From positions 1-64,000 of IMG/VR virus record IMGVR_UViG_3300030041_000009: DNA of 64,000 nt. One strand, given 5' to 3'. Shown in pieces: positions 12,274 through 53,158 of this stretch. Numbering within the stretch: the stretch's first letter is position 1; the number at the start of each line of letters is the position of its first letter. The notes under the pieces were generated by a model, which ran no database searches, had not been told where the DNA came from, and saw only the letters and a program-made list of their open reading frames with translations. A program made the position numbers and the translations under genes.

Positions 12274-13116
12274 TTATTTTTTAAAATTATTAAAATCAGA
12301 TATATATTTATTATAATCAATAACTTTTGATTTATTATATGTATTTGAAACATAAGTCTCAAAAATTTCCCAGTCTTTTTCTATTTCATTCAAAATTCTT
12401 TCAGAATTTTTTAAAAAAACATCTGATTTTAATTTAAATATTTTAAACCAGAAATTTAGCCAAGTTTCAATACTATTTGAAGTTATTGTTTTAACATCGT
12501 TTTTAATAAGTATATCATTAAAATCATCAACTTCTTTTTGTTTTAATTGTGAAACAAGAATACTCATTTTTATATTTTTTATATTATCATATAATTTATA
12601 TGTTTCCCAATCTTTTAATCTTAATATAGCATCATCTTTTGAACATCTACCTTCACTTTTAATATAAATATAAGTTTGAGCAACATTAGCATTAACTTCA
12701 TTGTCCAATGTTTTATAAAAAATATCAGTAATAAATTCCATTGCATTAGACATAGAATAATTTTTAAATTTTAATAAAGATGTTTTTATTTTATTATATT
12801 TTGGATAGTCCTTATCTCCAATACCTAAAATTTCTATAACATGAGTTAGCTCATGCGATATATTTTCCTTAACTCTATTTTCATTACCATTTGTTGGTAT
12901 TCCAATATTAACTATAATATTATTAGGTTTAATAATTTTAATGTTTGAGTAATAACTATTTATATTGTTAAAAATTATTGTAATATCTCTATATCCAATA
13001 TCATCACGTCCAAATTTTAATATGTGAGATGAATATGAATTATTAATAAATAATTTCCATATATTGTTTACTTCGTTCTTTATTATATCTGATATACCTT
13101 TACCCTCATTTAACAT
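12274..13116 (-). CDS. HExxH metallopeptidase, paralogue 2
   Basis: LNEGKGIS leader; SHELTH...YKTLDNEVNAN. Confidence 0.7.
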   Translation of the reverse strand: MLNEGKGISDIIKNEVNNIWKLFINNSYSSHILKFGRDDIGYRDITIIFNNINSYYSNIKIIKPNNIIVNIGIPTNGNENRVKENISHELTHVIEILGIGDKDYPKYNKIKTSLLKFKNYSMSNAMEFITDIFYKTLDNEVNANVAQTYIYIKSEGRCSKDDAILRLKDWETYKLYDNIKNIKMSILVSQLKQKEVDDFNDILIKNDVKTITSNSIETWLNFWFKIFKLKSDVFLKNSERILNEIEKDWEIFETYVSNTYNKSKVIDYNKYISDFNNFKK

Positions 13117-28508: not shown

Positions 28509-30001
28509 ATAGTTTCTAATTTCGATGAAAAACAATGAAATCAGTTTAAAATTAAGTTAATAATTTTTGGGGTAACTACAAACCCCTCTATTCCGTCAAT
28601 AAATATATTCGGAAATGCTTTTCTTAAAATGTTATAACTACCATTTACATCTGCGTTAATTATCACATTTGAATTTTTTATTTTATATAAACCTCTACTT
28701 TGACGATATCCACTGAATATTTTTTCGGTTTTGTCTCCGTAAACTGGTATTAAATCTAAATTCAAAAATGAAGATTTGCTAGTATAACTTTCTTCTTGTA
28801 ATATAACTCTTATTCCTTCTTTTTCGCACTTATACGATAACATCGATATAAATCTACTATGTGGAATCTGTATGAAATTCTGGTTGTTCTGTTTTGACAT
28901 GTTGCATTCTTGTTTCCAACCATCATTTTTACCAATAACTAATTTTGATATGTTATTGATAATTAATTCTTTAACTATTTGATTACTTGCTTTGTGTAGG
29001 TAATCATCTACTTTATTGTTTCGTTTATTTGTTAACTTCCTTATTCCTTTACTTGACTTCTTTTTATTAGTGATTTCAAGAACTGATTTCATTTCTGCTA
29101 AACGTTTATTGTAATATTGATTTGTAGATTTAAGTGGTCTACCATTAAAAATTAATGGTTGAAATCCTTTAATACTGGTCGTTAATGTCGCTAAATTATT
29201 TACACCTAAATCAATTGAAGCGTATCGTTTGTTGTCTCTGACTTGTTTCTTTTCATTATAGGTATAACACACTTCAATCACGTATTGATCAAGCCTTGGT
29301 ATTATCCGAACGCAATCTATTGAATTAATATCAGTTAACTTGGTATAGAATTCTATTTTAGTACCTGATAACTTGATTTTGTTTGTTTTCTTGAATACTT
29401 TTCTTGATATCGCTTGATAATTATATGAAATAATAAATCTTCCTTTAATCTTATGAAGAAATCCTGGTTGCTCTGGATAACTTTTATACTTTGATTTATT
29501 TTTACCATAATCTTTACATGAATTAAAGAAACTTTTGTAATTTCGTTGAACCTGAATGATAGTTCCAGTCGCAACTTTCATTGGTAATCTCTGAAAGCAC
29601 TCTTCAGACTTCATTACTTGATATAACTTATTTAAAGGATTATAATCAGTTGTTTCTAAACCTTGTCTGATTAAATAAACTGATCGATTATAGATGTTCT
29701 TTGATTTAAAACATAATTCATCACACTCTTTATAATTTGAATGTGATTTAGTAATTATATGTCTTTCCGTCAATTTCATGTATTAATACCTAATTTTAAT
29801 GTATATATTAATAAAAATATATTATTTATTTATATTTTATAGAAATTAAATCATTAAAAGTTTAAATTAATTTATTATTTTTATTTAACTATTTATTTTA
29901 ATTTATATGATAAATATTTACTATCTTAGTTTATTAAATCATTTGATGAAATAATTTCATTGAAATTCATTATTTTTCATTCATTTATATGAAGATTTTG
30001 A
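28509..30001 (-). mobile_element. Non-autonomous TnpB-only IS200/IS605/IS607-type element, about 1.49 kb
   Basis: Ends inferred from in-frame reconstitution at a shared TAT; TTCATTRTTTTTCAT inverted motifs near both ends; no tnpA. Confidence 0.75.
28541..29779 (-). CDS. tnpB: RNA-guided endonuclease TnpB
   Basis: SKNIYN, IDLGVNNL (RuvC-I), YLHKAS, EESYTSK, NADVNGSYNI (RuvC-III). Confidence 0.92.
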   Translation of the reverse strand: MKLTERHIITKSHSNYKECDELCFKSKNIYNRSVYLIRQGLETTDYNPLNKLYQVMKSEECFQRLPMKVATGTIIQVQRNYKSFFNSCKDYGKNKSKYKSYPEQPGFLHKIKGRFIISYNYQAISRKVFKKTNKIKLSGTKIEFYTKLTDINSIDCVRIIPRLDQYVIEVCYTYNEKKQVRDNKRYASIDLGVNNLATLTTSIKGFQPLIFNGRPLKSTNQYYNKRLAEMKSVLEITNKKKSSKGIRKLTNKRNNKVDDYLHKASNQIVKELIINNISKLVIGKNDGWKQECNMSKQNNQNFIQIPHSRFISMLSYKCEKEGIRVILQEESYTSKSSFLNLDLIPVYGDKTEKIFSGYRQSRGLYKIKNSNVIINADVNGSYNILRKAFPNIFIDGIEGFVVTPKIINLILN

Positions 30002-38649: not shown

Positions 38650-40498
38650 TTAATTCACAACATTATCATTTTTCTTTTCCATTATTTTTATTAATTCAAG
38701 AATTTTTGTTTTTTCATTAAATGTTTGAATTTCTTTATCAGAAATTTCTAATGGTTTAAAATGTAAAACTATTTCACCTCCTGCTAATTTGTGTAATTTA
38801 CCTTCAACAGTATGCCAATCTAAAATTCTGTGAATTCCTTCTATATGTGAAATTACATTTTCATTTTTTGATATTTTAATAGCATGTTTTTTATTTCTTT
38901 TATAAATTTCAATCGAAGGACATCCTTGATTACTAATAATACCAATCTCTTTAGAATTTTCATCAAATAATTTAGAATAAATAGTGAACTCTATGTTACA
39001 ACGCTTTGTTGTATATCCAAGTGATATACATATATCTTCCATAAAATTAATATTAAATACATCATTTATGACATAGTATTCCATTATACCATATTTTTCA
39101 ATTATTGGATTTTTAATATTATTATTTTTTCCTATCCATTCTTCTTTTGTCATATTTGTCATTTTACCAACAATCATAATCAGTTATATTTTCTTCTTTT
39201 TTTAAAAGATTATCAATTATAATTACTGCAGTTCCTATTCCTGTTGGAGTAAATCTATAACTAAATCTACCGCCTATTGCTGTTTTCGGTGATTTTTTCT
39301 TTTTCTCTTGTTTTTTGATCCATTCATTTGCAGATTTTTCTTCTTTTTCATTTAAATAATATGTTATCATAATTTAATATATTTTTAATTGTTCAAGTTT
39401 TTGCTTACGAATATCTTGTTTACAAAAATGATGATAATCTATTAATCTAATAGTAATTAATTTCATTCTATTTTTTGCAAGTTCTATATCAAAATATTTT
39501 ACTGAATAACAAGCTAAATCATCAGTATACGTAGATAATTTTATATCTTTTATTATATTTTCACCTAATGAATTTATAGATTTTAAATAATTTTTAACTG
39601 ATGTATTTTTCATTATTTTAATTTCTTAATTGTTTTAATTTTTATATCTATCATTGATATCAATCTATTTATTTCTTGAGAATGAATGCCACCCTGTGAT
39701 ATTTTAATTAAATATTGAATATTTATATTATATAAATCTTCTAATATGGTAATTGTATCAGAATTATTTATCAAAGTTTCAAGTTCTGTACTATCATTCC
39801 AAAAAATTTTATTTTTCCTTGTAGAATTAGTAGTAATTATTATTAATGAAGAAAATAAAAAAGATATATAAAGCGCCAATTTAAGCATAATATTAACTGA
39901 AATATCTTTATCTATAGTAATAAAATAAACCATCGAATAAATAATAATAAAATATATCACGAATGATATACCAAAAATAATCCATAAAGAACATTTACTA
40001 AAAAATTTAGTTATTGCTTTCATAATTTTATTTTTTTAAACTGAAATAATATAGAATTAACCATGATAAAACTAATATAATAAAAATAATTAACAAATAA
40101 TATTTACTAAAAAAATTATTTATTGCTTTCATAATTTTATTTTTTAAATGTAAATACTAAAAAGTTTATAAACCTATGCTTATGAATAATATCAAACAAT
40201 TACTTTTAAATTTATTTGAGAAAATAGAATACATATTTAAAAATATAGTAAATTCGCTAATCAATTCTTTAAATTTTATATCTGCATCTTCTTGACTCAT
40301 TTTATTATCAAGTACATAATTTTTAATATCAATCATTCTATTTGATAAACTAAATACTTTTTCGACCATTTTGTCAGAAAAAACTCCAATCAAATCAAAT
40401 GTTTCCATTAATTTGTTGAAAGATTTATAATTATCAATATTATTATCATTTATCCAAGAATTTTCTAAATTAAAACTATAGTCTGATTTCATTTCCAT
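38650..40498 (-). CDS. Five hypothetical ORFs (38650, 39164, 39374 tagged, 39613 two-TM, 40166)
   Basis: Co-oriented packed ORFs. Confidence 0.6.
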
Positions 40499-40565: not shown

Positions 40566-40793
40566 TTATTTATTTAATTTTTTTTTAATGTTTTTTGAAT
40601 TAGATATTTTTTCAAGATTTTTTAATTTTTTAATTCTTTCTTCCTTTTTCTTTCTTTTGTTTTCGTATTTTTTTAATATTTCTGCAGTTTTAAAATTAAT
40701 AATTATAAAATCTCCTGATCCTGAAAGTTTTTTATTATGTATCAGATTAGATGCATCTAATAATTTTTGATAAAGTTCATTATTAATCGACAT
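40566..40793 (-). CDS. 75 aa mini-protein: major-capsid-like segment plus tag
   Basis: KLLDASNLIHNKKLSGSGDFIIINFKTAEIL...EERIKKLKNL. Confidence 0.6.
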   Translation of the reverse strand: MSINNELYQKLLDASNLIHNKKLSGSGDFIIINFKTAEILKKYENKRKKKEERIKKLKNLEKISNSKNIKKKLNK

Positions 40794-41265
40794 TTAATTT
40801 TTTTAATTTTTTGCTTCTTATATATTTAACAATATTAGAATTTTTATTAATTATATCATTACTAATATAACGAATACAATTTTCTTCTACTTCACAATAA
40901 TTATTGTAACAATTTTTTAATTTACATGCATCATATTTATCATAAGAATCCCATTCAATTCTTTTATTCGGACAATTTTCATCAATAAAATTAATAAATT
41001 TTTTCTTATTTTCAATATTAATATATCTATTCTTTGATGTTTTTATATCTGTTTTTATTGTGAAAGTTTTTAATGCACTTGATGATATAGTTAATTCTAT
41101 TTCAGCCTCATTATCTCTTATGGTGTATCCCGTTATTGAATCATAATCAATTATTGTGAATTCATGATAACAACTAAATTTACAATAACTTAAAGTTATT
41201 TCAGTTAATGATACAATTATATCTCTTACTTTAAATTCTGGATTTAAATAAATTGGAATTACCAT
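40783..41265 (-). CDS. Cys-containing hypothetical protein with tag
   Basis: Ends YIRSKKLKKL. Confidence 0.6.
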   Translation of the reverse strand: MVIPIYLNPEFKVRDIIVSLTEITLSYCKFSCYHEFTIIDYDSITGYTIRDNEAEIELTISSSALKTFTIKTDIKTSKNRYINIENKKKFINFIDENCPNKRIEWDSYDKYDACKLKNCYNNYCEVEENCIRYISNDIINKNSNIVKYIRSKKLKKLNVD

Positions 41266-41360
41266 ATTATATTTTTTTCAAAGATAATAAAAAAAAATTG
41301 AATTACCTACTATTTTAAAAATATTTATATAAAAAAAGTCCCATAAAGAGACTTTTTAAT

Positions 41361-41432
41361 TTGAGCAAGTGGTCTGATTTGAACAGAATCCTTTAACTGG
41401 AAGCTAAACGCATTAACATATGCTACCACTGC
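41361..41432 (-). tRNA. tRNA-Gly(TCC)-like, atypical (copy 1)
   Basis: GCAGTGG...TTTAG-CTTCCAG-TTAAA...TCTG-TTCAAAT-CAGA-CCACTTGC-TCAA; bulged acceptor stem, 4 bp T stem. Confidence 0.7.
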
Positions 41433-41435
41433 ATT

Positions 41436-42293
41436 TTAATAATATCTATATTTTTCATTCATATTTCCTTGATCCTTAATAACTTCATTAATTATAGATA
41501 ATAACTTTTTTTTATTTTTAATACATTTATTTTTAAATATATTTTCCCATTTTTTAAAATAATCTATTAATGGTAAATTTGAATCTATAAAATCTAAATT
41601 GTAATTATTTTTAATAATTTGTTCATTTAAATGATTAATTAAAACTATTAACGCTGGCTCTGATATTTTTTCTAACATATAATTATAAAATTTTTCAGCA
41701 TTAAAACTATCCAATTCTTCATATTTTTTCCATGATTCACATTCTTTAATTTTTTCTAATAAAATATTTTTATCTATGCTATTAAATTTCATTAAAAAAT
41801 GATACGCTTCTGAAACTCTAGCGTTTAATTCATTATCCAAAGATAAATAAATAAAATATGTAAAATCATTTAAAGGTGTCTCGATTTTGTTAAAATTTGT
41901 TATAATTTTTTGTAAATTAACATGAGTAGGTAAATCTCTTTGATTCTTAACCAAATTATAAAATTCTAAAACATGAGTCAATTCATGAGATATTTTACTT
42001 TTTATGATGTAATCATCAGTTCCAATAGGAACAAAAAAGTATAAATTTATATTTTTTAATATATTATTTGAAAAAGTATAATTTATAGGATCAAATTTAG
42101 CATAACAATCTAATCTTTTTTCAAAATTAATAGTCAATTTAATATTATATAAAGGAAATAAAATATCTTTTAAATCTAAAAAAATAATCTTATCTTCATA
42201 GTCTAAAAAATTAGTATAAATAATATCAGAATATGTTTTAATAATGTTAGAAATACCATTACCTTCATTGATAAAATTTAAATACTTTTTCAT
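41436..42293 (-). CDS. HExxH metallopeptidase, paralogue 3
   Basis: MKKYLNFINEGNGIS; SHELTH...YLSLDNELNAR. Confidence 0.7.
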   Translation of the reverse strand: MKKYLNFINEGNGISNIIKTYSDIIYTNFLDYEDKIIFLDLKDILFPLYNIKLTINFEKRLDCYAKFDPINYTFSNNILKNINLYFFVPIGTDDYIIKSKISHELTHVLEFYNLVKNQRDLPTHVNLQKIITNFNKIETPLNDFTYFIYLSLDNELNARVSEAYHFLMKFNSIDKNILLEKIKECESWKKYEELDSFNAEKFYNYMLEKISEPALIVLINHLNEQIIKNNYNLDFIDSNLPLIDYFKKWENIFKNKCIKNKKKLLSIINEVIKDQGNMNEKYRYY

Positions 42294-43264
42294 ATTGGTA
42301 TATTAAAATTTTCATTTAATAAATTTTTAAAAAATATAGGATCATATAAATACATTCTATTAAAATCTTTATGAAATATTGCAGATGGTATCGATGAGAA
42401 CTCTAAATTACCCTCATTAATCCTATTATCAACACTTGATATTTTACTTTTTATATATTTTAACCTAATATCAAATAATTCTTTAAGATCAATTAAAAAT
42501 TTATCATTATTAGTTTCTTTCCATATAGATTTATTTAATTTCTTAATATATTTCTTATTTTTTGAATAATAATAAATACTCTGATATATTTTATCTTTTA
42601 ATAAATTTAATTCAATTTCTTCTATATTACTAAGCTTTTTTATATTAAATTTTTCAATATCTTTAATATTATCAAATATTTTATTGTATTTTTTACCAAT
42701 CTTACTAAAATAATAATATTGATGTATTTGAGCATCGATTTCATGACTTAAAGTTTTATATAATAATTCAATTATATTATTAATATAATCTGATTTAAAA
42801 TTGTTTCTAAATTGACTCAAAATAACTCCGATAGACCAAGAAGATGACCTAAATTTATTATTTTTAGAAATATTGTAATATTGAAAAATGTGTAAACATT
42901 CATGTAAAATGACAGAATCTATATAATCATTAAAATATATCTCATCTTTATCAGAAATATAAATATCTAAAACTATTTCAATATTAGATAAAATATCATT
43001 ACTCATTTTAGAGTTATTAAATCTAGCAACAGAGTTGCAAACATTTTCTTTATATTTATATAAATTAAATATTACTTTAATATTATCTAATTTTAAGTCA
43101 TTTTCAGATAATTCATAAGTAAACTCATTACTTAAATTAATATTATTAAAATTAATTAATATATTATGCAAATCTTTTGATATAGTCTCCTGTAAAATTT
43201 CACAAGAATCAGATATCGATTTTCTTTCTAATAAATATGTGTTGTAATTGTTTAAATAATCCAT
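42290..43264 (-). CDS. HExxH metallopeptidase, paralogue 4 (start MDYLNNY)
   Basis: LHECLH...YKTLSHEIDAQ; the longer track ORF extends into the tRNA. Confidence 0.7.
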   Translation of the reverse strand: MDYLNNYNTYLLERKSISDSCEILQETISKDLHNILINFNNINLSNEFTYELSENDLKLDNIKVIFNLYKYKENVCNSVARFNNSKMSNDILSNIEIVLDIYISDKDEIYFNDYIDSVILHECLHIFQYYNISKNNKFRSSSWSIGVILSQFRNNFKSDYINNIIELLYKTLSHEIDAQIHQYYYFSKIGKKYNKIFDNIKDIEKFNIKKLSNIEEIELNLLKDKIYQSIYYYSKNKKYIKKLNKSIWKETNNDKFLIDLKELFDIRLKYIKSKISSVDNRINEGNLEFSSIPSAIFHKDFNRMYLYDPIFFKNLLNENFNIPI

Positions 43265-43273
43265 AATATAAAT

Positions 43274-43345
43274 TTGAGCAAGTGGTCTGATTTGAACAGA
43301 ATCCTTTAACTGGAAGCTAAACGCATTAACATATGCTACCACTGC
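43274..43345 (-). tRNA. tRNA-Gly(TCC)-like (copy 2, identical)
   Basis: Inside the 88 bp perfect direct repeat 43271-43358 = 41358-41445. Confidence 0.7.
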
Positions 43346-43379
43346 ATTTTAATAATATAGTAATTAAATATTAAAAAGT

Positions 43380-43706
43380 TTATAAATTAAATTTTTTAAT
43401 ATCATATTTTATTTGTATTTCTGGATCTAATTTTACATCATTTAAAACCTTAGCAGTATCTAAATAAATTTTTTTATCTAAATCACATACATTAAAATTC
43501 TCAATTAATGTATCAATATCAAAAATATCTTCAATTTCATAATCTATATCATTGTCTTTATATTCATTGCAAATATGATTTATAGTAAAATTATTTCTGC
43601 TTAATTTATCATCAAATGAATACATATCATTTATACCACAATCTGATATAGTACAAAGATAAATTATTGTTCCAGTATTATTTTCAAATAATTTTAAATG
43701 CTTCAT
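43380..43706 (-). CDS. Hypothetical protein with CTS-like leader and KKFNL tail
   Basis: MKHLKLFE...DIKKFNL. Confidence 0.6.
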   Translation of the reverse strand: MKHLKLFENNTGTIIYLCTISDCGINDMYSFDDKLSRNNFTINHICNEYKDNDIDYEIEDIFDIDTLIENFNVCDLDKKIYLDTAKVLNDVKLDPEIQIKYDIKKFNL

Positions 43707-43707
43707 A

Positions 43708-45309
43708 TTATTTTTTTAAAGTATATATAAATTTTAAAAATCCAGAATCATATATGCGATATACCTTCCGTTCTAACATAATTTCATGCTCTGTTTTATT
43801 TATATCAAATCCTTCTGTTACTAATTTATTTTTACGAAAATTACATTTATTATGCCTAATATTATCAATAATATATTGATAATCTGGCTTAACTTTATCG
43901 ACAAAATCAAATCCTATTTTTTTATATAAATTAATTTGACTAAAACTTCTATCAAAATAACATACTATTTCTTTCGCACTATATTTATTTATAAAATAAT
44001 TTAATAACGTAATTTCACTATCAATAATATTAGTATTTATTTTATTACTAAAACTTATCATCTCATAATTATTATTCTTAATATTAAATGTCATTAAACT
44101 AATTAATTCATTACCTAAATATAAACCAATTTTTATATTAGATTTAATATATCCATGTATATCATTTTTTTCTAAATAACTTTTAATTAAATTTATATCT
44201 AAAACTTCTCTTATTTCACAATCTTTTGAATCAATTACGTTTTCAAAAATATTTAATTTACTTAATATTATAGATTTTATAATTTCATTATTATAAATCC
44301 AGTCATCTTCATAAATATGAATCAATTGAATGCCTTGTTTTTCACATTCTTCAGTTTTATTTAAATGATAATCTTTATCTTTATTTAATTCATTGTGCCA
44401 CCATAAACCATTAAATTCAAATGCTAATTTCAAATTAGGTAAATAAATATCTAATTCTAAAGGATTTAAAATTTTTCTATCATTCAAAATTATCTCATCA
44501 TTATAATTTTCTTTAATAAAACCTAATAATTGTAACTCTAACCCACTAACATTTTTTGAAATTGGATTGCATTCTGTACATAATATTGTTTTATTATTTA
44601 TCCTATTCCACAATAATTTATAATCAATATTAAAATGATGATCTTTATGTAAATCACATTTAAATTCATATTGACCATTTGATAAATATCCAACAAATAT
44701 ATCTTTTCTATCTCTAATAATTTCAGATTTATATAATCCTTTATCAAAATTTTTCTTAAAACTAATAAATTGATTTTCTCTCATTTTAATAGATATTTCT
44801 GCATTTTGACTAGCATATTCTACTCCATATCTTTCTAAATTCGTTGATTTCATTTTATATGGATTTGTATAGTTAGCATCTCCATATTTTTCTAATTTAC
44901 TTACATGTCCTTTTTTGTTAATTTCTTTAGATTGCTGAGGATATTCGACACCAAAATTTTTTAAACAAGTTTCTACTTTTTTATCTTTAATAATTTGAGA
45001 ATTTGAAACATTTTCTACTCCATATTTTTCTAAATTTGTATTTTTTGATTTTTGTTCAGAACATTTTCTACTACAAGCATAATATGTTGTTGAATTTTTT
45101 GTGTTATAATTATATCTACTATATGAAATAATAGTTTCTTCGCCACAAACATCACATTTTGCTTTAATTTTTGATACACTTCTTGTAGGTAAATCTATTG
45201 CAAGTATAGAAATAATTTCATTTCCTCCTTTTACTTCATACCCTTTTTCTTTATAATATTTAATTTGATTATTAGATATTTTTACATCGACATACTTTGT
45301 CAAAATCAT
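43708..45309 (-). CDS. Hef-like homing endonuclease (Vsr/PD-(D/E)xK type)
   Basis: CDVCG, KYGV repeats, ELDIYLP...AFEFNGLWWH...IHIYEDDW. Confidence 0.75.
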   Translation of the reverse strand: MILTKYVDVKISNNQIKYYKEKGYEVKGGNEIISILAIDLPTRSVSKIKAKCDVCGEETIISYSRYNYNTKNSTTYYACSRKCSEQKSKNTNLEKYGVENVSNSQIIKDKKVETCLKNFGVEYPQQSKEINKKGHVSKLEKYGDANYTNPYKMKSTNLERYGVEYASQNAEISIKMRENQFISFKKNFDKGLYKSEIIRDRKDIFVGYLSNGQYEFKCDLHKDHHFNIDYKLLWNRINNKTILCTECNPISKNVSGLELQLLGFIKENYNDEIILNDRKILNPLELDIYLPNLKLAFEFNGLWWHNELNKDKDYHLNKTEECEKQGIQLIHIYEDDWIYNNEIIKSIILSKLNIFENVIDSKDCEIREVLDINLIKSYLEKNDIHGYIKSNIKIGLYLGNELISLMTFNIKNNNYEMISFSNKINTNIIDSEITLLNYFINKYSAKEIVCYFDRSFSQINLYKKIGFDFVDKVKPDYQYIIDNIRHNKCNFRKNKLVTEGFDINKTEHEIMLERKVYRIYDSGFLKFIYTLKK

Positions 45310-45371: not shown

Positions 45372-46856
45372 TCATAAAGGAGTTCCCTCTAATTTTTTAA
45401 GCTCATTTTGTAATTTATCAAGTTCTTCATGTTTTTCCATCATCACGTTTTTCCACTTTTTTCTATCAGAATATACTTCTCTCATTACACTACTAACAAC
45501 TCCTTCCTCATTCTTAAATACTGATCCATTTAAAGTTATGATATCATCAGGCTCAATTGTTAATTGATGTCCATTAAATATGGAATAATCTTTACCTTTT
45601 ACTTTTTGACCTTTATATGAATCTGCAGATATGTTAAATTCTCTCATAGTAGTAGGATACAAGGAACTAAAGTCAAAACAGCATGTCCATTCTGCCATAC
45701 CTCTTACAGGTTCTTTAACCCATCCTCCTTTTATAGATTCAGTTTCAGTATCTCCGTATTCACTATCTTCATTTCTAACAAGAACAATATTTTTTTGATC
45801 TCTTAATTTTTCTCTTAAAATTCCTTCTGTTAATGCAAGAGTTGAAATTGCATCTTTAATCTTAATTTTACCCAATACAGCCATGCCATAAAGTATGTCT
45901 ACATATTTCATTTTTTTATGTATCTGTTGAACTAAGCAACTATCTACAGCATTATAGAATACAAATTTCTTATAGTCCTCTTTATGCAATTTTTTTAAAT
46001 CTCCATCGTAATTAATTTTCTTAATTTCTTTTCCTAGTAATTTTTCAGAAGCGAAATCTAAAGATAAACTTTCCTTTACTTTAACTGATTGATCCCATTT
46101 TTTAAATAATTCCATATAATCAACTATAACCCTATGCGCTGGCATTTCTGCGTAACTTGGATTAATAGCATTAGGAGGATTAAATGGTTTATTAAGTTTT
46201 TTTGTGAATGAGGCAACCTCAGGTTCAAGTCCAATTCTTCTTGCTCTTGCAACTAAATATGTCCAGTCATAATTAATGAAATTCCAACCAGTTATTACTG
46301 GCATTTTAGGAACTAATTTGTTAAAAAAACTATGAAGCATATCATATTCAGTTTTGTACTGAACATATTTAAATTTATAATTTGTTCCAAATTTTTGAAA
46401 ATGAGTATTGATATCATTACCAATTGATTCAATTTGTGCAGCATCTAAAAACTGAGTTCCAATTACCAACACTTTATCTTTATTTACTATTGATATTGTT
46501 TGTATCTCACCCTCAGCAAGTTGTGGTTGTGGTTTACCAGTATTAAGAATCTCGTTCTCAATATCAACGAAGAATATATCTGGTTCTGCATATGAATATA
46601 TTTCATCTCGTTCTTCTTTATCAAAACTATCTATGAAATCATAAATGGAATACCGATTTGGGTATTTTGTATAAATCTCTTTAACATTTTCTCCTGACCA
46701 TGTGACAAATCTACCACTTTTTTCTTTATCATCATCAGTAGTTTTTATAAATTTTGTTGGGCGACTCCAATTTTTATATTTTAGTTTGATCTGACCAGAA
46801 CTATCTATATATGAGATAATTAGGTTATTATTTTTATATTCAGTATCTACAATCAT
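45372..46856 (-). CDS. Family B DNA polymerase, N-terminal subunit only (exonuclease plus motif A)
   Basis: VDIE (ExoI), GWNFINYD (ExoII), YNAVD (ExoIII), GGWV, DFSSLYP; motifs B and C absent. Confidence 0.9.
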   Translation of the reverse strand: MIVDTEYKNNNLIISYIDSSGQIKLKYKNWSRPTKFIKTTDDDKEKSGRFVTWSGENVKEIYTKYPNRYSIYDFIDSFDKEERDEIYSYAEPDIFFVDIENEILNTGKPQPQLAEGEIQTISIVNKDKVLVIGTQFLDAAQIESIGNDINTHFQKFGTNYKFKYVQYKTEYDMLHSFFNKLVPKMPVITGWNFINYDWTYLVARARRIGLEPEVASFTKKLNKPFNPPNAINPSYAEMPAHRVIVDYMELFKKWDQSVKVKESLSLDFASEKLLGKEIKKINYDGDLKKLHKEDYKKFVFYNAVDSCLVQQIHKKMKYVDILYGMAVLGKIKIKDAISTLALTEGILREKLRDQKNIVLVRNEDSEYGDTETESIKGGWVKEPVRGMAEWTCCFDFSSLYPTTMREFNISADSYKGQKVKGKDYSIFNGHQLTIEPDDIITLNGSVFKNEEGVVSSVMREVYSDRKKWKNVMMEKHEELDKLQNELKKLEGTPL

Positions 46857-47277: not shown

Positions 47278-48492
47278 ATGAGAAAATTAACTACAAATGA
47301 ATTTATAGAAAAATCAAATGAGATACATAATAATAGATATGATTATTCAAATACTATTTATACTGGTTGTAAAAATGATGTCGAAATAATTTGTTCAATA
47401 CACGGAAAATTTACTCAAAATGCTCAATCTCATTTAAATGGGCATGAATGTACGAAATGTTCTGGTCATTATATATATTCTAAAATAGAATTTATTGAAA
47501 AAGCTAATATTGTACATAATAAATATGACTATAGTTTAACGAATTATATAAATAGTAGAAATAAGATTAAAATAATATGTCCGATTCACGGAGAATTTAT
47601 CATAAGGGCGAATAATCATTTACTTGGAATAGGATGTTCAAAATGTAGTGGAAAAAATAAAAATATATCTGAAATAATTGATGATTTTAATAAAATATAT
47701 GATTATAAATATGATTATAGTTTAGTTAATAATTATAAAGATAAACATTCTATAATTAAAATAATATGTCCAATTCACGGAGAATTCGAAAAAATTGCAT
47801 ATGCTCATAACAATGGTCACGGATGTCCAAAATGCGGCATAAATACATTATCTACTTCTAAATTTATAGAATTATCAAAATTAAATCATAATAATAAATA
47901 TGATTATAGTTTAGTTAAATATAATGGTGTTATGAATACTGTAAAAATAATATGTCCAATACATGGTATGTTTGAACAGATTAGTAGATTTCATTTAAAT
48001 GGTAGTGATTGTCCAAACTGTTCAGAATCTAAAGGTGAAAAAGAAATCAGAAATTATTTAGATAATAATAATATAACTGAGAATGAATTTAATAAATTAT
48101 TTAAAAAATATTATAAACAATGTTACATATATGATGCTTCTATAATGTTAGATAAATTTAATTTAAAAAATTTTAGTAGATTAAATTCTAATAATTTGGT
48201 TATATTTTTTAATGTTTTAAATGATAAAAAGAATTTATTGAAAATACATCAAAAAAGTGGAAAATTTAAAAAATTTTTATTAGATATTTATGATGTGTTA
48301 ACTAACCGTTATTTTAATGATTATTATTATAAAAAAATAGATAAGAGTATTAAAATAGAAAATTTGGATAATATATTAGAAATTTATGATAAAAGATTTA
48401 AGAATGCATCAAAAACTATTAAAAATAAGTTATCTAAATTATATAGTTTAATATTAGATGAATTAAAACATGAAAATTTAATAAAAAATTAA
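47278..48492 (+). CDS. Chimera: four C[PS]IHG zinc repeats (HEG type) fused to a metallopeptidase C-terminal domain
   Basis: C[PS]IHG..F...H..G..CxxC four times, SKGE, then about 140 aa matching the end of 49934-50866. Confidence 0.75.
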   Translation: MRKLTTNEFIEKSNEIHNNRYDYSNTIYTGCKNDVEIICSIHGKFTQNAQSHLNGHECTKCSGHYIYSKIEFIEKANIVHNKYDYSLTNYINSRNKIKIICPIHGEFIIRANNHLLGIGCSKCSGKNKNISEIIDDFNKIYDYKYDYSLVNNYKDKHSIIKIICPIHGEFEKIAYAHNNGHGCPKCGINTLSTSKFIELSKLNHNNKYDYSLVKYNGVMNTVKIICPIHGMFEQISRFHLNGSDCPNCSESKGEKEIRNYLDNNNITENEFNKLFKKYYKQCYIYDASIMLDKFNLKNFSRLNSNNLVIFFNVLNDKKNLLKIHQKSGKFKKFLLDIYDVLTNRYFNDYYYKKIDKSIKIENLDNILEIYDKRFKNASKTIKNKLSKLYSLILDELKHENLIKN

Positions 48493-48948: not shown

Positions 48949-49893
48949 ATGATAAATAATTACGATGAATATATATTAGAAAATAGAGGAATATCAAATA
49001 TTATAAAACAATATACAGATATAATATTTATAGAAATTAAAAAAAATATAGAAGATAATATTTCAGATGAAATAATATTAGATTTAGATGCTCAGAATGA
49101 TTTTATTTTAAAAAATATGTTAATTGATTATAAATTATCTAATAGAAATTATGGATTATTTGATTCATCTCATATTATATTTAAAGATGATATATTATAT
49201 AATGTTATAATTAGAATTGAAATAGATCAAAATAAATTCAACGACGTAAAAATAAAGGAAATAATAACTCACGAATTGACTCACATTTTAGAATATTTTA
49301 GAATAAAACAAAATGATGTAAAATTAAATTTAAATATTAACGTTGATCCGAACTATATTTCAGTTCGTAAATCTATAAACTATATTAATTTTGATAATGA
49401 GTGGAATAGTTTTAAAACTCTGATTTATTTATCTTTAGATACTGAATATAACGCAAGGATTGCACAACTTTATCAATTTTTAATAGATTTTAATTCAAAA
49501 GATAGTGATTTTTTAATGAATAAATTTTTAAATAGTGAAACTTATAAATGTTACAGTTATTTAGATGAATTTAATGCAGAACTATTTTTGATAAAATTAA
49601 AAATGAATATTGGAGAAAATACATTAATATCGGAAATTAATAGATTGAATCAGGAATTAATAAATAGTGGTGTAAACAAACTTAATGGTTATAAATTTAT
49701 AAAAATTGTTGATATAGATAATGTTGAAGCATATTTAAACAATTGGAAAAATTTATTTAAGAATAAAAATAAAAAACACATAAAAAAAATAAATTTGATT
49801 ATCAAAGAAGTTATATCCGATGTTAAAGATAATAAAAAATGGTGTGATAATTTTGAAATTGATGAGAGTTATAAAAATAGATTATTAGAATAA
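48949..49893 (+). CDS. HExxH metallopeptidase, paralogue 5
   Basis: MINNYDEYILENRGIS; THELTH...YLSLDTEYNAR. Confidence 0.7.
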   Translation: MINNYDEYILENRGISNIIKQYTDIIFIEIKKNIEDNISDEIILDLDAQNDFILKNMLIDYKLSNRNYGLFDSSHIIFKDDILYNVIIRIEIDQNKFNDVKIKEIITHELTHILEYFRIKQNDVKLNLNINVDPNYISVRKSINYINFDNEWNSFKTLIYLSLDTEYNARIAQLYQFLIDFNSKDSDFLMNKFLNSETYKCYSYLDEFNAELFLIKLKMNIGENTLISEINRLNQELINSGVNKLNGYKFIKIVDIDNVEAYLNNWKNLFKNKNKKHIKKINLIIKEVISDVKDNKKWCDNFEIDESYKNRLLE

Positions 49894-49933: not shown

Positions 49934-50866
49934 ATGATAATAAAAAATAAAATATTTAATTTAATAGTAGAGAAAGTTGGAATTGAGTTGGATATTAAAG
50001 ATTTAAGTGATCAAATTTATAAATTGATTATAAATGATAAAAAATTATATTATAAATTTGATGGTAAGTTATTTGATGTTAGAATTATGCACATTAATTC
50101 AATACTGATATTTATATCAAACAATGATTCTTCATTTGATGCATCATCTTCAACATTAACTGAAAAAGGATTTGATATTATATTGAATATAAATAAGAAT
50201 GATATAGAAACTAAAGTTATACATCACGAATTAAATCATGCTTTAAAATTTTATATGATAGGTAAAGAAAAATATATAGATAAAACTCGTGAATTAAAAA
50301 GTTATAAAATGAGTAGAACTTTTATTAAAAACCCAGATATTGAAGATTTTATAGATTTGGTTTATTATTCTGATTTAGAAGAAGTTGATTCTTTCATTAG
50401 TGAAGCATATTATGAAATTATGGAAAATTTTAAAAAAATTGGTAGAGTTATAACTAATATAGAATTTAATAAATATTTTAATTCATTTCACAAAGATACT
50501 TACATATATAAAATGTCTGATGTATTATATAATTATAATTTTAAAATATTAAAAAAATATAATTCTGATATGCTGGTTGTATTTTTTAATGTTTTAAATG
50601 ATAAAAAAAATTTATTAATAATATCAAAAAAAAGTGGAAAATTTAAAAAATTTTTATTGAATATTATAAATTTATTTAATGATAAATATTATATGAGTTG
50701 GTATTATAGTAGAATAGATAAAAACATTAAAATTGAGAATTTAGATGAGATATTAGAAATATATGATAAAAGATTTAAAAGTGCATCAAAAACTATTAAA
50801 AATAAATTATCTAAATTATATAGTTTAATCTTGGAAGAATTAAAGAATGAAAATTTAATAAAATAA
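49934..50866 (+). CDS. HExxH metallopeptidase, paralogue 6
   Basis: HHELNH...YYSDLEEVDSF. Confidence 0.65.
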   Translation: MIIKNKIFNLIVEKVGIELDIKDLSDQIYKLIINDKKLYYKFDGKLFDVRIMHINSILIFISNNDSSFDASSSTLTEKGFDIILNINKNDIETKVIHHELNHALKFYMIGKEKYIDKTRELKSYKMSRTFIKNPDIEDFIDLVYYSDLEEVDSFISEAYYEIMENFKKIGRVITNIEFNKYFNSFHKDTYIYKMSDVLYNYNFKILKKYNSDMLVVFFNVLNDKKNLLIISKKSGKFKKFLLNIINLFNDKYYMSWYYSRIDKNIKIENLDEILEIYDKRFKSASKTIKNKLSKLYSLILEELKNENLIK

Positions 50867-51546: not shown

Positions 51547-51556
51547 AAATTATATA

Positions 51557-51608
51557 TTAGTTTATTATTTTGAATATTAATAAATTCATTCTTATATATT
51601 AATAATTC
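51557..51608 (-). repeat. Duplicated 3' end of the GT6 gene (identical to 52411-52462)
   Basis: 52 bp identity encoding ELLIYKNEFINIQNNKL. Confidence 0.85.
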
Positions 51609-52402: not shown

Positions 52403-53158
52403 TTAGTTTATTAGTTTATTATTTTGAATATTAATAAATTCATTCTTATATATTAATAATTCTTTTTTAAGTTCATCTACATTTAGATCTGGATATCTAG
52501 TTTCTCCTATTCCACCTTTATCACTAATAGCAAAAGCAAAGTCTTTACATAAAACTACTTTTGTTGGTGGATTAAAGTGTAAGTAGCAATTAATGTAACT
52601 TTCATCGTTTACCCCAGGTTCATATGGTATTTTTTTATCTTCCAATTGATAATATCTCATAGTTTTACAAAATTCAATCATATTTTCAGATGTACCACCA
52701 AAAAAAGCACCATAAAAATACATTTGATGTAATTTAGTATCAAATGGTACATATGCTTTTGATAACGGATTTCTATCAAATCCTTTTTCATTTTTCATCC
52801 AATCTTGATCTGCATAATGCTGGCCTCCAACTAAATCTCCAATAAACCAATCTTCAATAAAATCTTTATTTACATTAGTATCAGCATCAAAATAAAATAG
52901 ATAATCACTTTTTAATTTATCTTTAATTGATAATATAGATGTAAATTTTAAGTTTGTTCCATCTACCCAATTACTATTAGTCACATGAAAATATTCAACA
53001 TCAATATTATCAGGTATATAATTTTTTGGATCATTATCCGAGAAAAAATAGAATGTGATATTTTTATCACCTTTGTAAAATTTCATAAATCTTTTAATAA
53101 ATCTTATTCCTAACACAAAATAAGCATTTGTAGCTAATACAACTATTCCTATATTCAT
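52403..53158 (-). CDS. GT6 (ABO-like) glycosyltransferase
   Basis: IGIVVLATNAY, YLFYFDAD, GAFFGG, NDESYIN. Confidence 0.85.
   Translation of the reverse strand: MNIGIVVLATNAYFVLGIRFIKRFMKFYKGDKNITFYFFSDNDPKNYIPDNIDVEYFHVTNSNWVDGTNLKFTSILSIKDKLKSDYLFYFDADTNVNKDFIEDWFIGDLVGGQHYADQDWMKNEKGFDRNPLSKAYVPFDTKLHQMYFYGAFFGGTSENMIEFCKTMRYYQLEDKKIPYEPGVNDESYINCYLHFNPPTKVVLCKDFAFAISDKGGIGETRYPDLNVDELKKELLIYKNEFINIQNNKLIN

What the first reader, a model, noticed from the sequence alone, without database searches (positions are those of the whole stretch)
41358..43358. Perfect 88 bp repeat containing a whole tRNA flanks two metallopeptidase genes
41358-41445 equals 43271-43358 exactly, and the repeat supplies the last codons and stop of gene 41436. 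No integrase is nearby. Duplication of the full tRNA differs from usual att sites, which duplicate only the 3' part. Inference: a recent 1.9 kb cassette gain that can excise or amplify by recombination.
Basis: seen in the sequence. Interest (0 to 1): 0.65.

Follow-up and report, generated by a model that had tools for sequence, protein, structure and literature searches.

The report
Gene cassette flanked by duplicated tRNA
In a very AT-rich jumbo phage, two related zinc-protease-like genes sit between two identical copies of a small glycine tRNA gene next to a homing-endonuclease gene, and since relatives carry one tRNA copy with the same flanks and no cassette, this is a recombination-made gene gain or loss in a fast-changing region, not an integrase insertion.

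Summary
41358-41445 and 43271-43358 are identical (88/88). Each copy contains a 69-nt tRNA-Gly(UCC) on the minus strand: Rfam scores it 36.7 bits, ARAGORN misses it, and covariation supports a cloverleaf with a bulged U in the acceptor stem. Eight independent assemblies give the same two-copy structure, including a 346-kb contig and a 98.4%-identical strain.

The two genes in between (B 42290-43264, A 41436-42293) are distant paralogs with invariant HExxH and Glu residues. Their fold resemblance to zincin peptidases is only weak.

The locus lies downstream of the DNA polymerase N-half gene and a Hef-like homing endonuclease gene, and it is hypervariable among relatives. Some relatives have no tRNA. 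Several have one copy with the window's R2 left flank and R1 right flank and terminator, which is an empty-site-like allele. One has A–tRNA, and one has tRNA–A–tRNA.

The cassette was made by recombination at the tRNA unit and at microhomologies, not by an integrase. A's last codons are native to A, not supplied by the repeat. No same-strain empty site was found, so excision and amplification remain inferred. "Recent" is doubtful, because gene conversion could equally keep the copies identical.

The closest precedents are PeSL cassette shuffling and SegB-driven tRNA segmental amplification. I rate it a new variant of a known kind, of moderate interest.

The parts
43271..43358 (-). Repeat copy R2: 13-nt leader, tRNA, 6-nt trailer. 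Its left flank is homologous to the left flank of the single-copy tRNA in L025.
43277..43345 (-). tRNA-Gly(UCC), upstream copy. No hairpin follows it; gene B starts 12 nt after the tRNA.
42290..43264 (-). Gene B, 324 aa, with HECLH plus an invariant Glu. It is a zincin-like protein and a distant paralog of A. Its stop overlaps A's start (ATGA).
41436..42293 (-). Gene A, 285 aa, with HELTH plus an invariant Glu (E155). The model has pLDDT 84.8. Its native C-terminus YRYY* lies inside R1.
41358..41445 (-). Repeat copy R1, identical to R2. Its first 10 nt are also A's last codons and stop.
41364..41432 (-). tRNA-Gly(UCC), downstream copy.
41331..41357 (-). Hairpin plus U-run (terminator-like, -10.3 kcal/mol, z -4.5) directly after R1. 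It is conserved after the single tRNA in L025, and an analogous hairpin follows the tRNA in L008.
43380..43706 (-). g108, a small ORF of unknown function between HE1 and R2. It is absent from relatives. Its last codons and downstream flank derive from the tail of the HE gene, with about 8 nt of microhomology (AAAATTTA).
43708..45309 (-). HE1, a Hef-like homing endonuclease gene (phrog_3339, phrog_559, DUF7487). In relatives its 3' end is the conserved left boundary of the variable cargo.
45372..46856 (-). Family-B DNA polymerase N-terminal half (exonuclease domain plus the start of the polymerase domain). This is the conserved anchor gene; the variable locus begins right after it.
40783..41265 (-). 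g160, the first gene of the conserved right-hand block. In L023 and L024 it follows the polymerase gene directly.
48949..49893 (+). Paralog A2 of gene A (E 7e-33). It lies in a second variable segment bracketed by 78%-identical 415-nt direct repeats (48071-48485 and 50449-50863).
12274..13116 (-). Paralog A3 of gene A (E 8e-12).

Best explanation
The 88-nt repeat is a duplicated unit made of a phage tRNA-Gly(UCC) gene with 13 nt of leader and 6 nt of trailer. It sits in a hyperplastic locus of a jumbo phage (at least 346 kb, 22% GC), immediately downstream of the DNA-polymerase N-half gene and a Hef-like homing endonuclease gene.

The basic arrangement in relatives is HE – tRNA – terminator. 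In this phage two paralogous zincin-like genes (B, then A) lie between a tRNA copy and the tRNA's terminator, together with a second tRNA copy. The unit reads tRNA–B–A–tRNA–terminator and is probably one transcript.

The structure was produced by general recombination, not by site-specific integration. That means joins at short microhomologies on gene boundaries (ATATTATTAA between A's 3' end and the tRNA leader; ATGAAA at the B/A junction), plus homologous exchange or gene conversion between the tRNA units, which keeps them identical. Breaks made by the adjacent endonuclease are a plausible trigger (inferred).

The repeats are now substrates for homologous recombination. Loss of 1913 bp would give exactly the single-copy allele seen in L025, and unequal exchange would amplify the cassette and the tRNA (inferred, not observed).

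Shown: the repeat, the tRNA structure, the alleles in relatives, the junction sequences and the terminator position. Inferred: the order of events, the role of the endonuclease, co-transcription and current mobility.
For: - Exact repeat and tRNA. Covariation supporting the cloverleaf. The covariance model finds two copies only in the window, L106 and L107, and one or none elsewhere.
- Locus variability anchored on the polymerase N-half:
  - L023 and L024: polymerase then g160 directly.
  - L025, L034, L035: single tRNA.
  - L030, L031, L098: HE then a single tRNA.
  - L009, L010: HE–B–GATase, no tRNA.
  - L008: A–tRNA–terminator.
- L025's left flank equals the window's R2 left flank, and its right flank equals the window's R1 right flank with hairpin.
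- Hairpin plus U-run only after R1, conserved in L025 and L008.
- A's YRYY* end is native, and the spacer between A's stop and the tRNA is 32 nt in L008, 15 nt in L107 and 3 nt here.
- L107 is tRNA–A–tRNA.
- Independent assemblies agree.
- No integrase in the neighbourhood; HE1 is Hef-like.
- Published precedents: PMC2839356 (recombination between short repeated cassettes shuffles ORFs and makes mini-circles in T4-type phages) and PMC13096335 (a homing endonuclease next to tRNA genes drives recombination-dependent segmental amplification with a microhomology junction).
Against: - No empty-site allele of the same strain was found in assembled contigs, and reads were not available. Present-day excision or amplification is therefore unproven.
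- The direction of change (gain here versus loss in relatives) cannot be rooted, because the locus exchanges horizontally.
- L107 is only 971 nt long, and its two tRNA pieces overlap by just 13 nt, so its structure (two copies, tandem array or circle) is ambiguous.
- The junction between R2 and B (CAAATT|TATATT-ATG) shows no clear microhomology with B's native upstream sequence in L009.
- HE1's cleavage specificity is unknown, and some relatives have the HE without the tRNA (L009, L027).
- The promoter scan is uninformative in this AT-rich DNA: 66 sites found against 60.7 expected.
Confidence: 0.6

Rival explanations
1. SegB-like scenario, a more specific version of the main explanation. The adjacent Hef-like endonuclease cuts in or next to the tRNA gene, and recombination-dependent repair at microhomologies creates segmental duplications that are selected because they raise the tRNA-Gly(UCC) dose, for example against a tRNA-targeting host defence. 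B and A are passengers or extra anti-defence cargo. The true genome may carry more than one 1913-nt unit, collapsed by assembly.
For: - The HE gene, or its 3' remnant, lies just upstream of the locus's variable cargo in every tRNA-bearing lineage whose contig extends that far. In L025, L030, L031 and L098 it is directly upstream of the tRNA; in L008 gene A lies between; L107 is too short to show its flanks.
- There is a 10-nt microhomology between the neighbouring gene's 3' end and the tRNA leader, like the T6 junction described in PMC13096335.
- The whole tRNA is duplicated.
- GGA is the commonest Gly codon, at 46.5%.
- The phage also encodes an RtcB tRNA ligase.
- R–Z–R is what a collapsed tandem array assembles to.
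Against: - HE1 is not a SegB or GIY-YIG homolog, and its target is unknown.
- The unit does not include the HE gene.
- B–A is foreign to the single-copy alleles, so this is not a simple tandem duplication of local sequence.
- No coverage data were available.
- Relatives exist with the HE but no tRNA (L009, L027).
Confidence: 0.25
2. Reverse polarity. The two-copy cassette state is ancestral for this group, and single-copy relatives such as L025 arose from it by homologous recombination between the tRNA copies (cassette loss). On this view the window shows an old structure, not a gain.
For: - L025 has exactly the product expected from R1×R2 recombination.
- The window's tRNA allele shares four derived positions only with L107, which also has tRNA on both sides of A although its A gene is 85.5% identical at the DNA level. 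This suggests the duplicated state is not very young.
Against: - Five single-copy lineages (L025, L030, L031, L098, L008), with different right-hand neighbours, stand against two two-copy lineages.
- Relatives with B alone (L009) or A alone (L008) show that the two genes have separate histories.
- Perfect 88/88 identity would need continuous gene conversion.
Confidence: 0.2
3. Assembly artefact. The real population is an empty-site genome plus a separate 1913-bp circle or another strain, joined through the 88-nt repeat by the assembler.
For: Short exact repeats can cause mis-joins, and all the evidence comes from short-read metagenome assemblies. No reads were available here.
Against: - Eight independent assemblies from different samples and pipelines give the same joins.
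- One is a MEGAHIT k141 contig, whose k-mers are longer than the repeat. That comes from the contig name plus my own knowledge of the assembler.
- That contig is from a strain with 32 substitutions, so it is not the same data.
- No contig with the alternative join exists in either collection.
Confidence: 0.04
4. Site-specific integration of a small mobile element into a tRNA gene by an integrase, with att duplication.
For: Direct repeats containing tRNA sequence flank foreign genes, which is the classic look of a tRNA-targeted island.
Against: - There is no integrase or recombinase in the cassette or its flanks. The nearest transposase-like gene is 12 kb away, at 28541-29779.
- The whole tRNA plus its leader is duplicated, not just a 3' segment.
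- The left end of the repeat coincides with a microhomology to A's native end.
- The host here is a lytic-type jumbo phage genome, not a chromosome.
Confidence: 0.02

Closest known systems
PeSL (promoter-early stem-loop) mobile regulatory cassettes of T4-type phages (Arbiol et al. 2010, PMC2839356; Comeau et al. 2014, PMC4122927)
   Same: Short repeated non-coding units flank non-essential ORFs in hyperplastic regions. Recombination between the units explains insertions, deletions and replacements among close relatives and can release mini-circles. No integrase is involved.
   Different: Here the repeated unit is a whole tRNA gene, not a promoter plus terminator, and the terminator lies outside the repeat. 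Only two copies exist in 64 kb, rather than a dispersed family. Mini-circles have not been shown.
SegB-driven segmental amplification of the tRNA region in phage T6/T4 (Chihara et al. 2026, PMC13096335; Brok-Volchanskaya et al. 2008, PMC2330249)
   Same: A free-standing homing endonuclease gene lies next to tRNA genes. A segment containing a full-length tRNA is duplicated. The junction is a microhomology between the tRNA 5' region and the 3' end of the neighbouring gene. The process depends on recombination and needs no integrase.
   Different: HE1 is a Hef-like protein, not a GIY-YIG SegB. The repeat unit carries two foreign zincin-like genes and not the endonuclease gene. The structure is fixed in natural populations, not selected in the laboratory. 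Cleavage and amplification are untested.
tRNA-targeted integrative elements (att duplication by tyrosine integrases)
   Same: Direct repeats of tRNA sequence bracket acquired genes.
   Different: There is no integrase. The whole tRNA plus its leader is duplicated, and both copies are intact. The repeat ends fall at a microhomology.
Zincin (HExxH) metallopeptidases of the gluzincin type, such as IrrE/PprI, CapP and SprT/Wss1-like minimal zincins
   Same: HExxH lies on a long helix after a small beta-sheet, and an invariant Glu sits on a following helix. The top structural hits are enriched in zincins.
   Different: No sequence-family membership was found, and the best Z is only 5.1. The proteins have an extra C-terminal helical bundle. 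Activity is unknown.

Membership tests
tRNA (Rfam RF00005) | Covariance-model score at or above the family's gathering score | tested here: met
   36.7 bits against 29 for both copies.
tRNA (Rfam RF00005) | Cloverleaf maintained by compensatory changes among homologs | tested here: met
   100% of cells paired. Three pairs changed on both sides (5:63, 6:62, 28:38). 3/500 shuffles reached the observed percentage paired and covariation score, and 17/500 reached the count of compensatory pairs.
tRNA (Rfam RF00005) | Seven-nt anticodon loop with U33 and a purine at position 37 | tested here: met
   The loop is CUUCCAG, giving anticodon UCC and A37. The L008 allele has a 2-nt insertion in the loop.
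tRNA (Rfam RF00005) | Canonical uninterrupted 7-bp acceptor stem and 5-bp T stem | tested here: not met
   The canonical register pairs only 86.7%, with two positions never paired. The supported register has a bulged U and a 4-bp T stem. ARAGORN does not call it.
tRNA (Rfam RF00005) | Expression, processing and aminoacylation with glycine | not testable with these tools
   G1-C72, C2-G71 and U73 fit bacterial Gly identity rules as I know them. No data here.
Integrase-mediated tRNA att duplication | Integrase or recombinase gene in or beside the element | tested here: not met
   None in 36-49 kb by Pfam or PHROGs.
Integrase-mediated tRNA att duplication | Repeat limited to the 3' part of the tRNA | tested here: not met
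   The repeat covers all 69 nt plus 13 nt upstream and 6 nt downstream.
PeSL-type regulatory cassette shuffling | Repeated unit made of a strong sigma-70-like promoter plus a stem-loop terminator | tested here: not met
   The repeat is a tRNA. The hairpin lies outside the repeat and follows only R1. The promoter scan shows no enrichment.
PeSL-type regulatory cassette shuffling | Repeats bracket dispensable ORFs in a hyperplastic region, and relatives differ by gain or loss at the repeats | tested here: met
PeSL-type regulatory cassette shuffling | Mini-circles formed by recombination between the repeats | not testable with these tools
   Needs reads or PCR. L107's 13-nt terminal overlap is suggestive only.
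SegB-type HE-driven tRNA segmental amplification | Free-standing homing endonuclease gene within 1 kb of the tRNA | tested here: met
   HE1 ends 363 nt upstream of R2's tRNA. In L030 and L031 the gap is about 37 nt.
SegB-type HE-driven tRNA segmental amplification | The endonuclease is a SegB (GIY-YIG) homolog | tested here: not met
   Matches are phrog_3339, phrog_559 and DUF7487, and annotated relatives are 'Hef-like'.
SegB-type HE-driven tRNA segmental amplification | Head-to-tail repeat units containing a full tRNA, with a microhomology junction | tested here: inconclusive
   One unit bounded by two tRNA copies, with a 10-nt microhomology at A|tRNA. Copy number cannot be read from contigs.
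SegB-type HE-driven tRNA segmental amplification | The endonuclease cleaves within or beside the tRNA genes | not testable with these tools
   Needs a biochemical assay.
Zincin metallopeptidase | Invariant HExxH and a third ligand (Glu) on a downstream helix | tested here: met
   H103, E104, H107 and E155 are invariant in 19 sequences spanning the A and B subfamilies. The helices are in the model.
Zincin metallopeptidase | Fold match to solved zincins | tested here: inconclusive
   Best matches are PprI Z 5.1, lugdulysin Z 4.5 and CapP Z 4.0. Foldseek finds nothing at E <= 0.001 in the PDB. BFVD gives weak hits labelled as peptidases.
Zincin metallopeptidase | Membership of a curated peptidase family | tested here: not met
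   No match in Pfam, NCBIfam, PHROGs or PADLOC. One distant member shows a sub-threshold SprT-like hit.

The most novel reading that the evidence does not exclude
The tRNA-Gly unit is a portable recombination and targeting module that travels with a Hef-like homing endonuclease. The endonuclease cuts at or beside the tRNA in rival genomes, and repair repeatedly captures cargo genes (here the zincin-like A/B family) between tRNA copies. This would give jumbo phages a natural cargo-capture and dosage-amplification device that supplies a defence-resistant tRNA (with its bulged acceptor stem) and possibly anti-defence proteases. It would extend the laboratory SegB phenomenon to a different endonuclease family and to gene acquisition in the wild.
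Probability: 0.15. Interest if true: 0.75.

Novelty: new variant of a known kind. Interest (0 to 1): 0.5.

Why it matters
The locus shows, in uncultivated jumbo phages, how accessory genes are gained and lost without integrases: through a short functional RNA gene reused as recombination homology beside a homing endonuclease.

It is a natural counterpart to two laboratory-documented processes, PeSL-mediated shuffling and SegB-driven tRNA amplification. It gives a concrete, testable locus with defined alleles carrying zero, one or two tRNA copies.

It also flags an atypical but structurally conserved phage tRNA-Gly that standard tRNA finders miss. And it identifies a large unannotated HExxH protein family (about 900 clusters) that is multi-copy in this phage.

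Tried and rejected
- ARAGORN on the window and relatives found no tRNA. I do not take this as evidence against a tRNA, because Rfam and covariation support one.
- Rfam at gathering threshold missed the diverged L008 copy. Reading the sequence and my own covariance model found it.
- Pfam, PHROGs, NCBIfam, PADLOC and a PDB sequence search for A and B gave nothing.
- Foldseek against the PDB gave nothing significant for either model. VIA-align on the whole model returned only helical-bundle noise.
- The same-strain empty-site pattern found nothing in metagenome or viral contigs.
- The tRNA pattern found nothing in 185,579 cellular genomes, so there is no host or donor clue.
- The search for related loci with the family alignment failed for lack of a conserved stretch. 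With B alone it found only the same phage.
- The promoter scan was uninformative in AT-rich DNA, and the terminator scan's GC rule missed the hairpin, which I then folded directly.
- The idea that the repeat supplies A's stop codon is rejected.
- The idea that g108 is bounded by a long duplication like B–A is rejected. Only about 8 nt of microhomology is present.
Full report
**1. The observation**

Window positions 41358-41445 and 43271-43358 are identical over 88 nt and lie 1913 nt apart. No other exact repeat in the window exceeds 54 nt.

ARAGORN finds no tRNA in the whole window. Rfam's tRNA model, however, matches the minus strand of both copies (41432-41364 and 43345-43277) at 36.7 bits, above its gathering score of 29. 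The anticodon loop reads CUUCCAG, so the anticodon is UCC (Gly).

The repeat consists of 13 nt of leader, the 69-nt tRNA and 6 nt of trailer.

**2. Is the tRNA real?**

Homologous units were recovered from relatives, giving five distinct full-length alleles plus a diverged one in L008.

- A cloverleaf with a 7-bp acceptor stem carrying a bulged U on its 3' strand, together with a 4-bp T stem, pairs 100% of cells.
- Three pairs show compensatory changes: 5:63 U-A to A-U, 6:62 G-C to U-A, and 28:38.
- The canonical register without the bulge pairs only 86.7%, and two positions never pair.

The RNA is therefore under selection for this unusual shape, which explains why ARAGORN fails. A covariance model built from these alleles finds exactly two copies in the window, none elsewhere in it, and one or none in most relatives.

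GGA is the commonest glycine codon in the window's long ORFs, at 46.5%. The pattern occurs in no cellular genome of the collection.

**3. The genes in between**

On the minus strand the order is:
- DNA polymerase B N-terminal half (46856-45372)
- HE1, a 533-aa homing endonuclease gene (45309-43708)
- g108 (43706-43380)
- R2
- gene B (43264-42290)
- gene A (42293-41436), whose start overlaps B's stop
- R1
- a hairpin plus U-run
- g160 (41265-40783)

The hairpin after R1 folds at -10.3 kcal/mol (z -4.5, 0 of 200 shuffles fold as well). Nothing comparable follows R2.

A and B have no match in Pfam, PHROGs, NCBIfam, PADLOC or PDB sequences. They are distant paralogs: A matches B homologs at 27% identity. 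A joint alignment of 19 sequences has invariant H103, E104, H107 (the HExxH motif), Y149, E155 and A158.

A has two further paralogs in the window, at 48949-49893 and 12274-13116. A profile search finds 910 representative clusters at E <= 0.001, so this is a large unannotated family.

The AlphaFold model of A is confident (pLDDT 84.8). The N-terminal domain alone was modelled. Its best structural neighbours are weak but enriched in zincins:
- PprI/IrrE at Z 5.1, ACE2 at 4.7, lugdulysin at 4.5, VgrG2b at 4.1 and CapP at 4.0.
- MATCAP, neurolysin, lethal factor, SPRTN and Wss1 lower down.
- ZMPSTE24, IrrE and selecase in Foldseek, at non-significant E-values.

BFVD gives three strong matches to uncharacterised phage proteins, then weak ones labelled as peptidases. 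'Zincin-like, probably a metallopeptidase' is reasonable. Membership of a known peptidase family is not shown.

**4. What kind of genome this is**

The window is 22% GC. It encodes a split family-B polymerase, PhoH, DHFR, an RtcB tRNA ligase, NAD synthetase and at least three homing-endonuclease-like genes.

The window is the first 64 kb of IMG/VR contig 3300030041_000009, which is 256 kb. The same sequence occurs in a 346.5-kb contig. Distant kin of its genes lie in 460-735-kb 'huge phage' records. It is a jumbo phage with an unknown host.

**5. Is the assembly right?**

Seven contigs from different samples are 100% identical here and all show two copies 1913 nt apart. An eighth, the ENA k141 contig L106, is 98.4% identical with 32 substitutions. 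It has the same tRNA–B–A–tRNA order, with both 88-nt copies identical to the window's.

A chimeric join is therefore very unlikely. Contigs cannot exclude a tandem array of the 1913-nt unit collapsed to one unit.

**6. Relatives: the key evidence**

Loci anchored on the polymerase N-half were mapped with the window's proteins and repeat.

| Loci | Polymerase identity | Order downstream of the polymerase N-half |
|---|---|---|
| L023, L024 | 83% | g160 directly; no HE, g108, tRNA, B or A |
| L025, L034, L035 | 85% | HE remnant – one tRNA – hairpin – g75… |
| L030, L031/L103, L098 | 74-77% | HE – one tRNA |
| L009, L010 | 79-83% (partial) | HE – B – GATase; no tRNA |
| L008 | 82% (partial) | reversed HE – 44 aa (reversed) – A – tRNA – terminator |

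The alignment of the tRNA units with their flanks shows two things. L025's left flank is homologous to the window's R2 left flank. L025's right flank, including the hairpin, is homologous to the window's R1 right flank. L025 is therefore what the window would be without the 1913-nt unit.

In L008 the tRNA lies 32 nt after A's stop. It is diverged and carries a 2-nt insertion in the anticodon loop.

In L107, a 971-nt contig whose A is 83% identical, the order is tRNA 3' part – 16 nt – A – 15 nt – tRNA 5' part. A alone is therefore bounded by the tRNA on both sides, or the unit is tandem or circular.

The 3' end of the HE gene (…NSGNLKF…*) is the conserved left boundary. After it come different cargoes in different lineages.

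**7. The junctions**

A's C-terminus YRYY* is conserved in P0002 and P0003, and at the DNA level (…AGATATTATTAA) in L107 and L008. The native tRNA leader in L025 and in R2 is ACT-ATATTATTAAAAT.

The first 10 nt of the 'repeat' are thus a microhomology between A's own end and the tRNA leader. Relative to L008 and L107, the window has lost the 15-32-nt spacer between them. This is what a microhomology-mediated join would give. It is also what a gene-conversion tract copied from R2 and ending in that microhomology would give.

B's stop overlaps the next gene's start at ATGAAA both here (B/A) and in L009 (B/GATase). g108 is inserted in the HE tail at an ~8-nt microhomology.

These are the marks of general or illegitimate recombination at gene boundaries, not of a site-specific recombinase. 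None is encoded nearby: the nearest transposase-like gene is 12 kb away.

**8. Age and direction**

The two copies are identical, while orthologous units in relatives differ by 6-17 positions. The state is shared with the 1.6%-diverged strain L106.

The window's allele shares A28, G29, U38 and G42 only with L107. That is the other lineage with tRNA on both sides of A, and its A gene is 85.5% identical at the DNA level. There are two readings: the duplication is older than that split and the copies are homogenised by gene conversion, or it has arisen more than once. 'Recent' is therefore not secure.

Single-copy alleles could be ancestral, or they could be products of loss through R1×R2 recombination. 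The locus exchanges horizontally, so I cannot root it.

No empty-site allele of this strain is present in assembled metagenome or viral contigs.

**9. Mechanism and comparison with known systems**

The best-supported reading is a cassette bounded by a duplicated functional tRNA unit in a homing-endonuclease-rich hyperplastic region. It was created and maintained by the phage's recombination machinery.

Two precedents are close.

PeSL cassettes in T4-type phages are short repeated promoter-terminator units whose recombination shuffles ORFs and yields mini-circles (PMC2839356). The logic is the same, but here the repeat is a tRNA gene and the terminator lies outside it.

SegB in T6 is a homing endonuclease beside tRNA genes that cuts within them. 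It provokes UvsX/UvsY-dependent segmental amplification of a unit containing a full tRNA, and the junction is a microhomology between the tRNA 5' end and the 3' end of the neighbouring gene (PMC13096335). The window shares with that system:
- the endonuclease-tRNA adjacency
- the full-tRNA duplication
- the microhomology junction

It differs in three ways. HE1 belongs to the Hef-like family. The unit contains two foreign genes rather than the endonuclease gene. Nothing has been tested.

An RtcB tRNA ligase elsewhere in the window fits a phage that contends with damage to tRNAs, but this is circumstantial.

**10. Verdict**

The cassette is a gain or loss at the tRNA unit, with no integrase. But A's stop is native, a homing endonuclease is adjacent, recency and direction are open, and mobility is unproven.
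- It is a new variant of known kinds of phage genome plasticity, with an atypical conserved tRNA and an unannotated HExxH family as by-products.
- Interest is moderate.

Noticed in passing
window 48071-48485 and 50449-50863; L020:1-3630: The last 415 nt of HE2 (47278-48492) and of g310 (49934-50866) are 78%-identical direct repeats (66% at the protein level) that bracket g128 and the A-family paralog A2. Contig 3300029913_000075 is 100% identical to the window up to 48075, exactly the edge of this repeat, and then carries different genes. This is a strain-level structural variant in the same phage population.
   Followed up: partly
window 41364-41432 and 43277-43345 (minus strand): The tRNA-Gly(UCC) has a conserved bulged U in the 3' strand of the acceptor stem, a 4-bp T stem and a 6-nt D loop with a single G. 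ARAGORN misses it in every locus.
   Followed up: yes
L008:2444-2514: The tRNA homolog downstream of A in L008 has a 2-nt insertion in the anticodon loop, giving either a 9-nt loop or a shifted 7-nt loop. It falls below Rfam's gathering score, so it may be a decaying copy or an unusual decoder.
   Followed up: partly
window 18612-20006 (minus strand): An RtcB-type tRNA splicing/repair ligase (phrog_1075, E 1e-116). Phage tRNA repair enzymes commonly counter host anticodon nucleases, which may bear on why tRNA dose matters here.
   Followed up: no
window 45372-46856 (minus strand): The family-B DNA polymerase gene is split. This 494-aa product covers the exonuclease domain and only the start of the polymerase domain, and it is a separate gene in all relatives. 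The C-terminal half was not found among the ORFs examined between about 28.5 and 50.9 kb of the window. The variable HE-rich locus starts right at the split.
   Followed up: partly
window 28541-29779 (minus strand): A transposase-like gene (phrog_506, E 2e-37) inside the phage genome, 12 kb from the cassette.
   Followed up: no
window 40638-40683; L003:3287-3304: Contig 3300029911_000002 carries an 18-nt in-frame expansion of a Lys/Glu-rich repeat (GAAAGAAAAAGGAAGAAA-like) in g75. It is the only indel between these assemblies in the region.
   Followed up: partly
window 39936-40039 and 40045-40148: A 104-nt tandem duplication at 77% identity covers the start of g136 and its upstream region.
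   Followed up: no
window 43680-43770 and 43380-43440: g108 appears inserted into the 3' tail of the homing endonuclease gene. HE1 keeps a tail (…LKFIYTLKK*), and g108 ends with …KKFNL* followed by the flank that follows the HE tail (…LKFIYNL*) in L025. The join is at an ~8-nt microhomology, AAAATTTA.
   Followed up: partly
window 51555-51608 and 52409-52462; 63061/63181; 17698/18018: Other exact direct repeats of 54, 44 and 36 nt in the window were not examined.
   Followed up: no
proteins P0019-P0164: The A/B HExxH family has about 910 representative clusters at E <= 0.001 and no Pfam model. Some members are fused to other domains: a 2H phosphoesterase/Acb1-like domain in P0141, and a sub-threshold SprT-like hit in the 1328-aa P0062.
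   Followed up: partly
L012:568-1761: A more distant phage carrying a B homolog encodes a PolyA_pol/CCA-adding-type nucleotidyltransferase, another tRNA-related function in this phage group.
   Followed up: no
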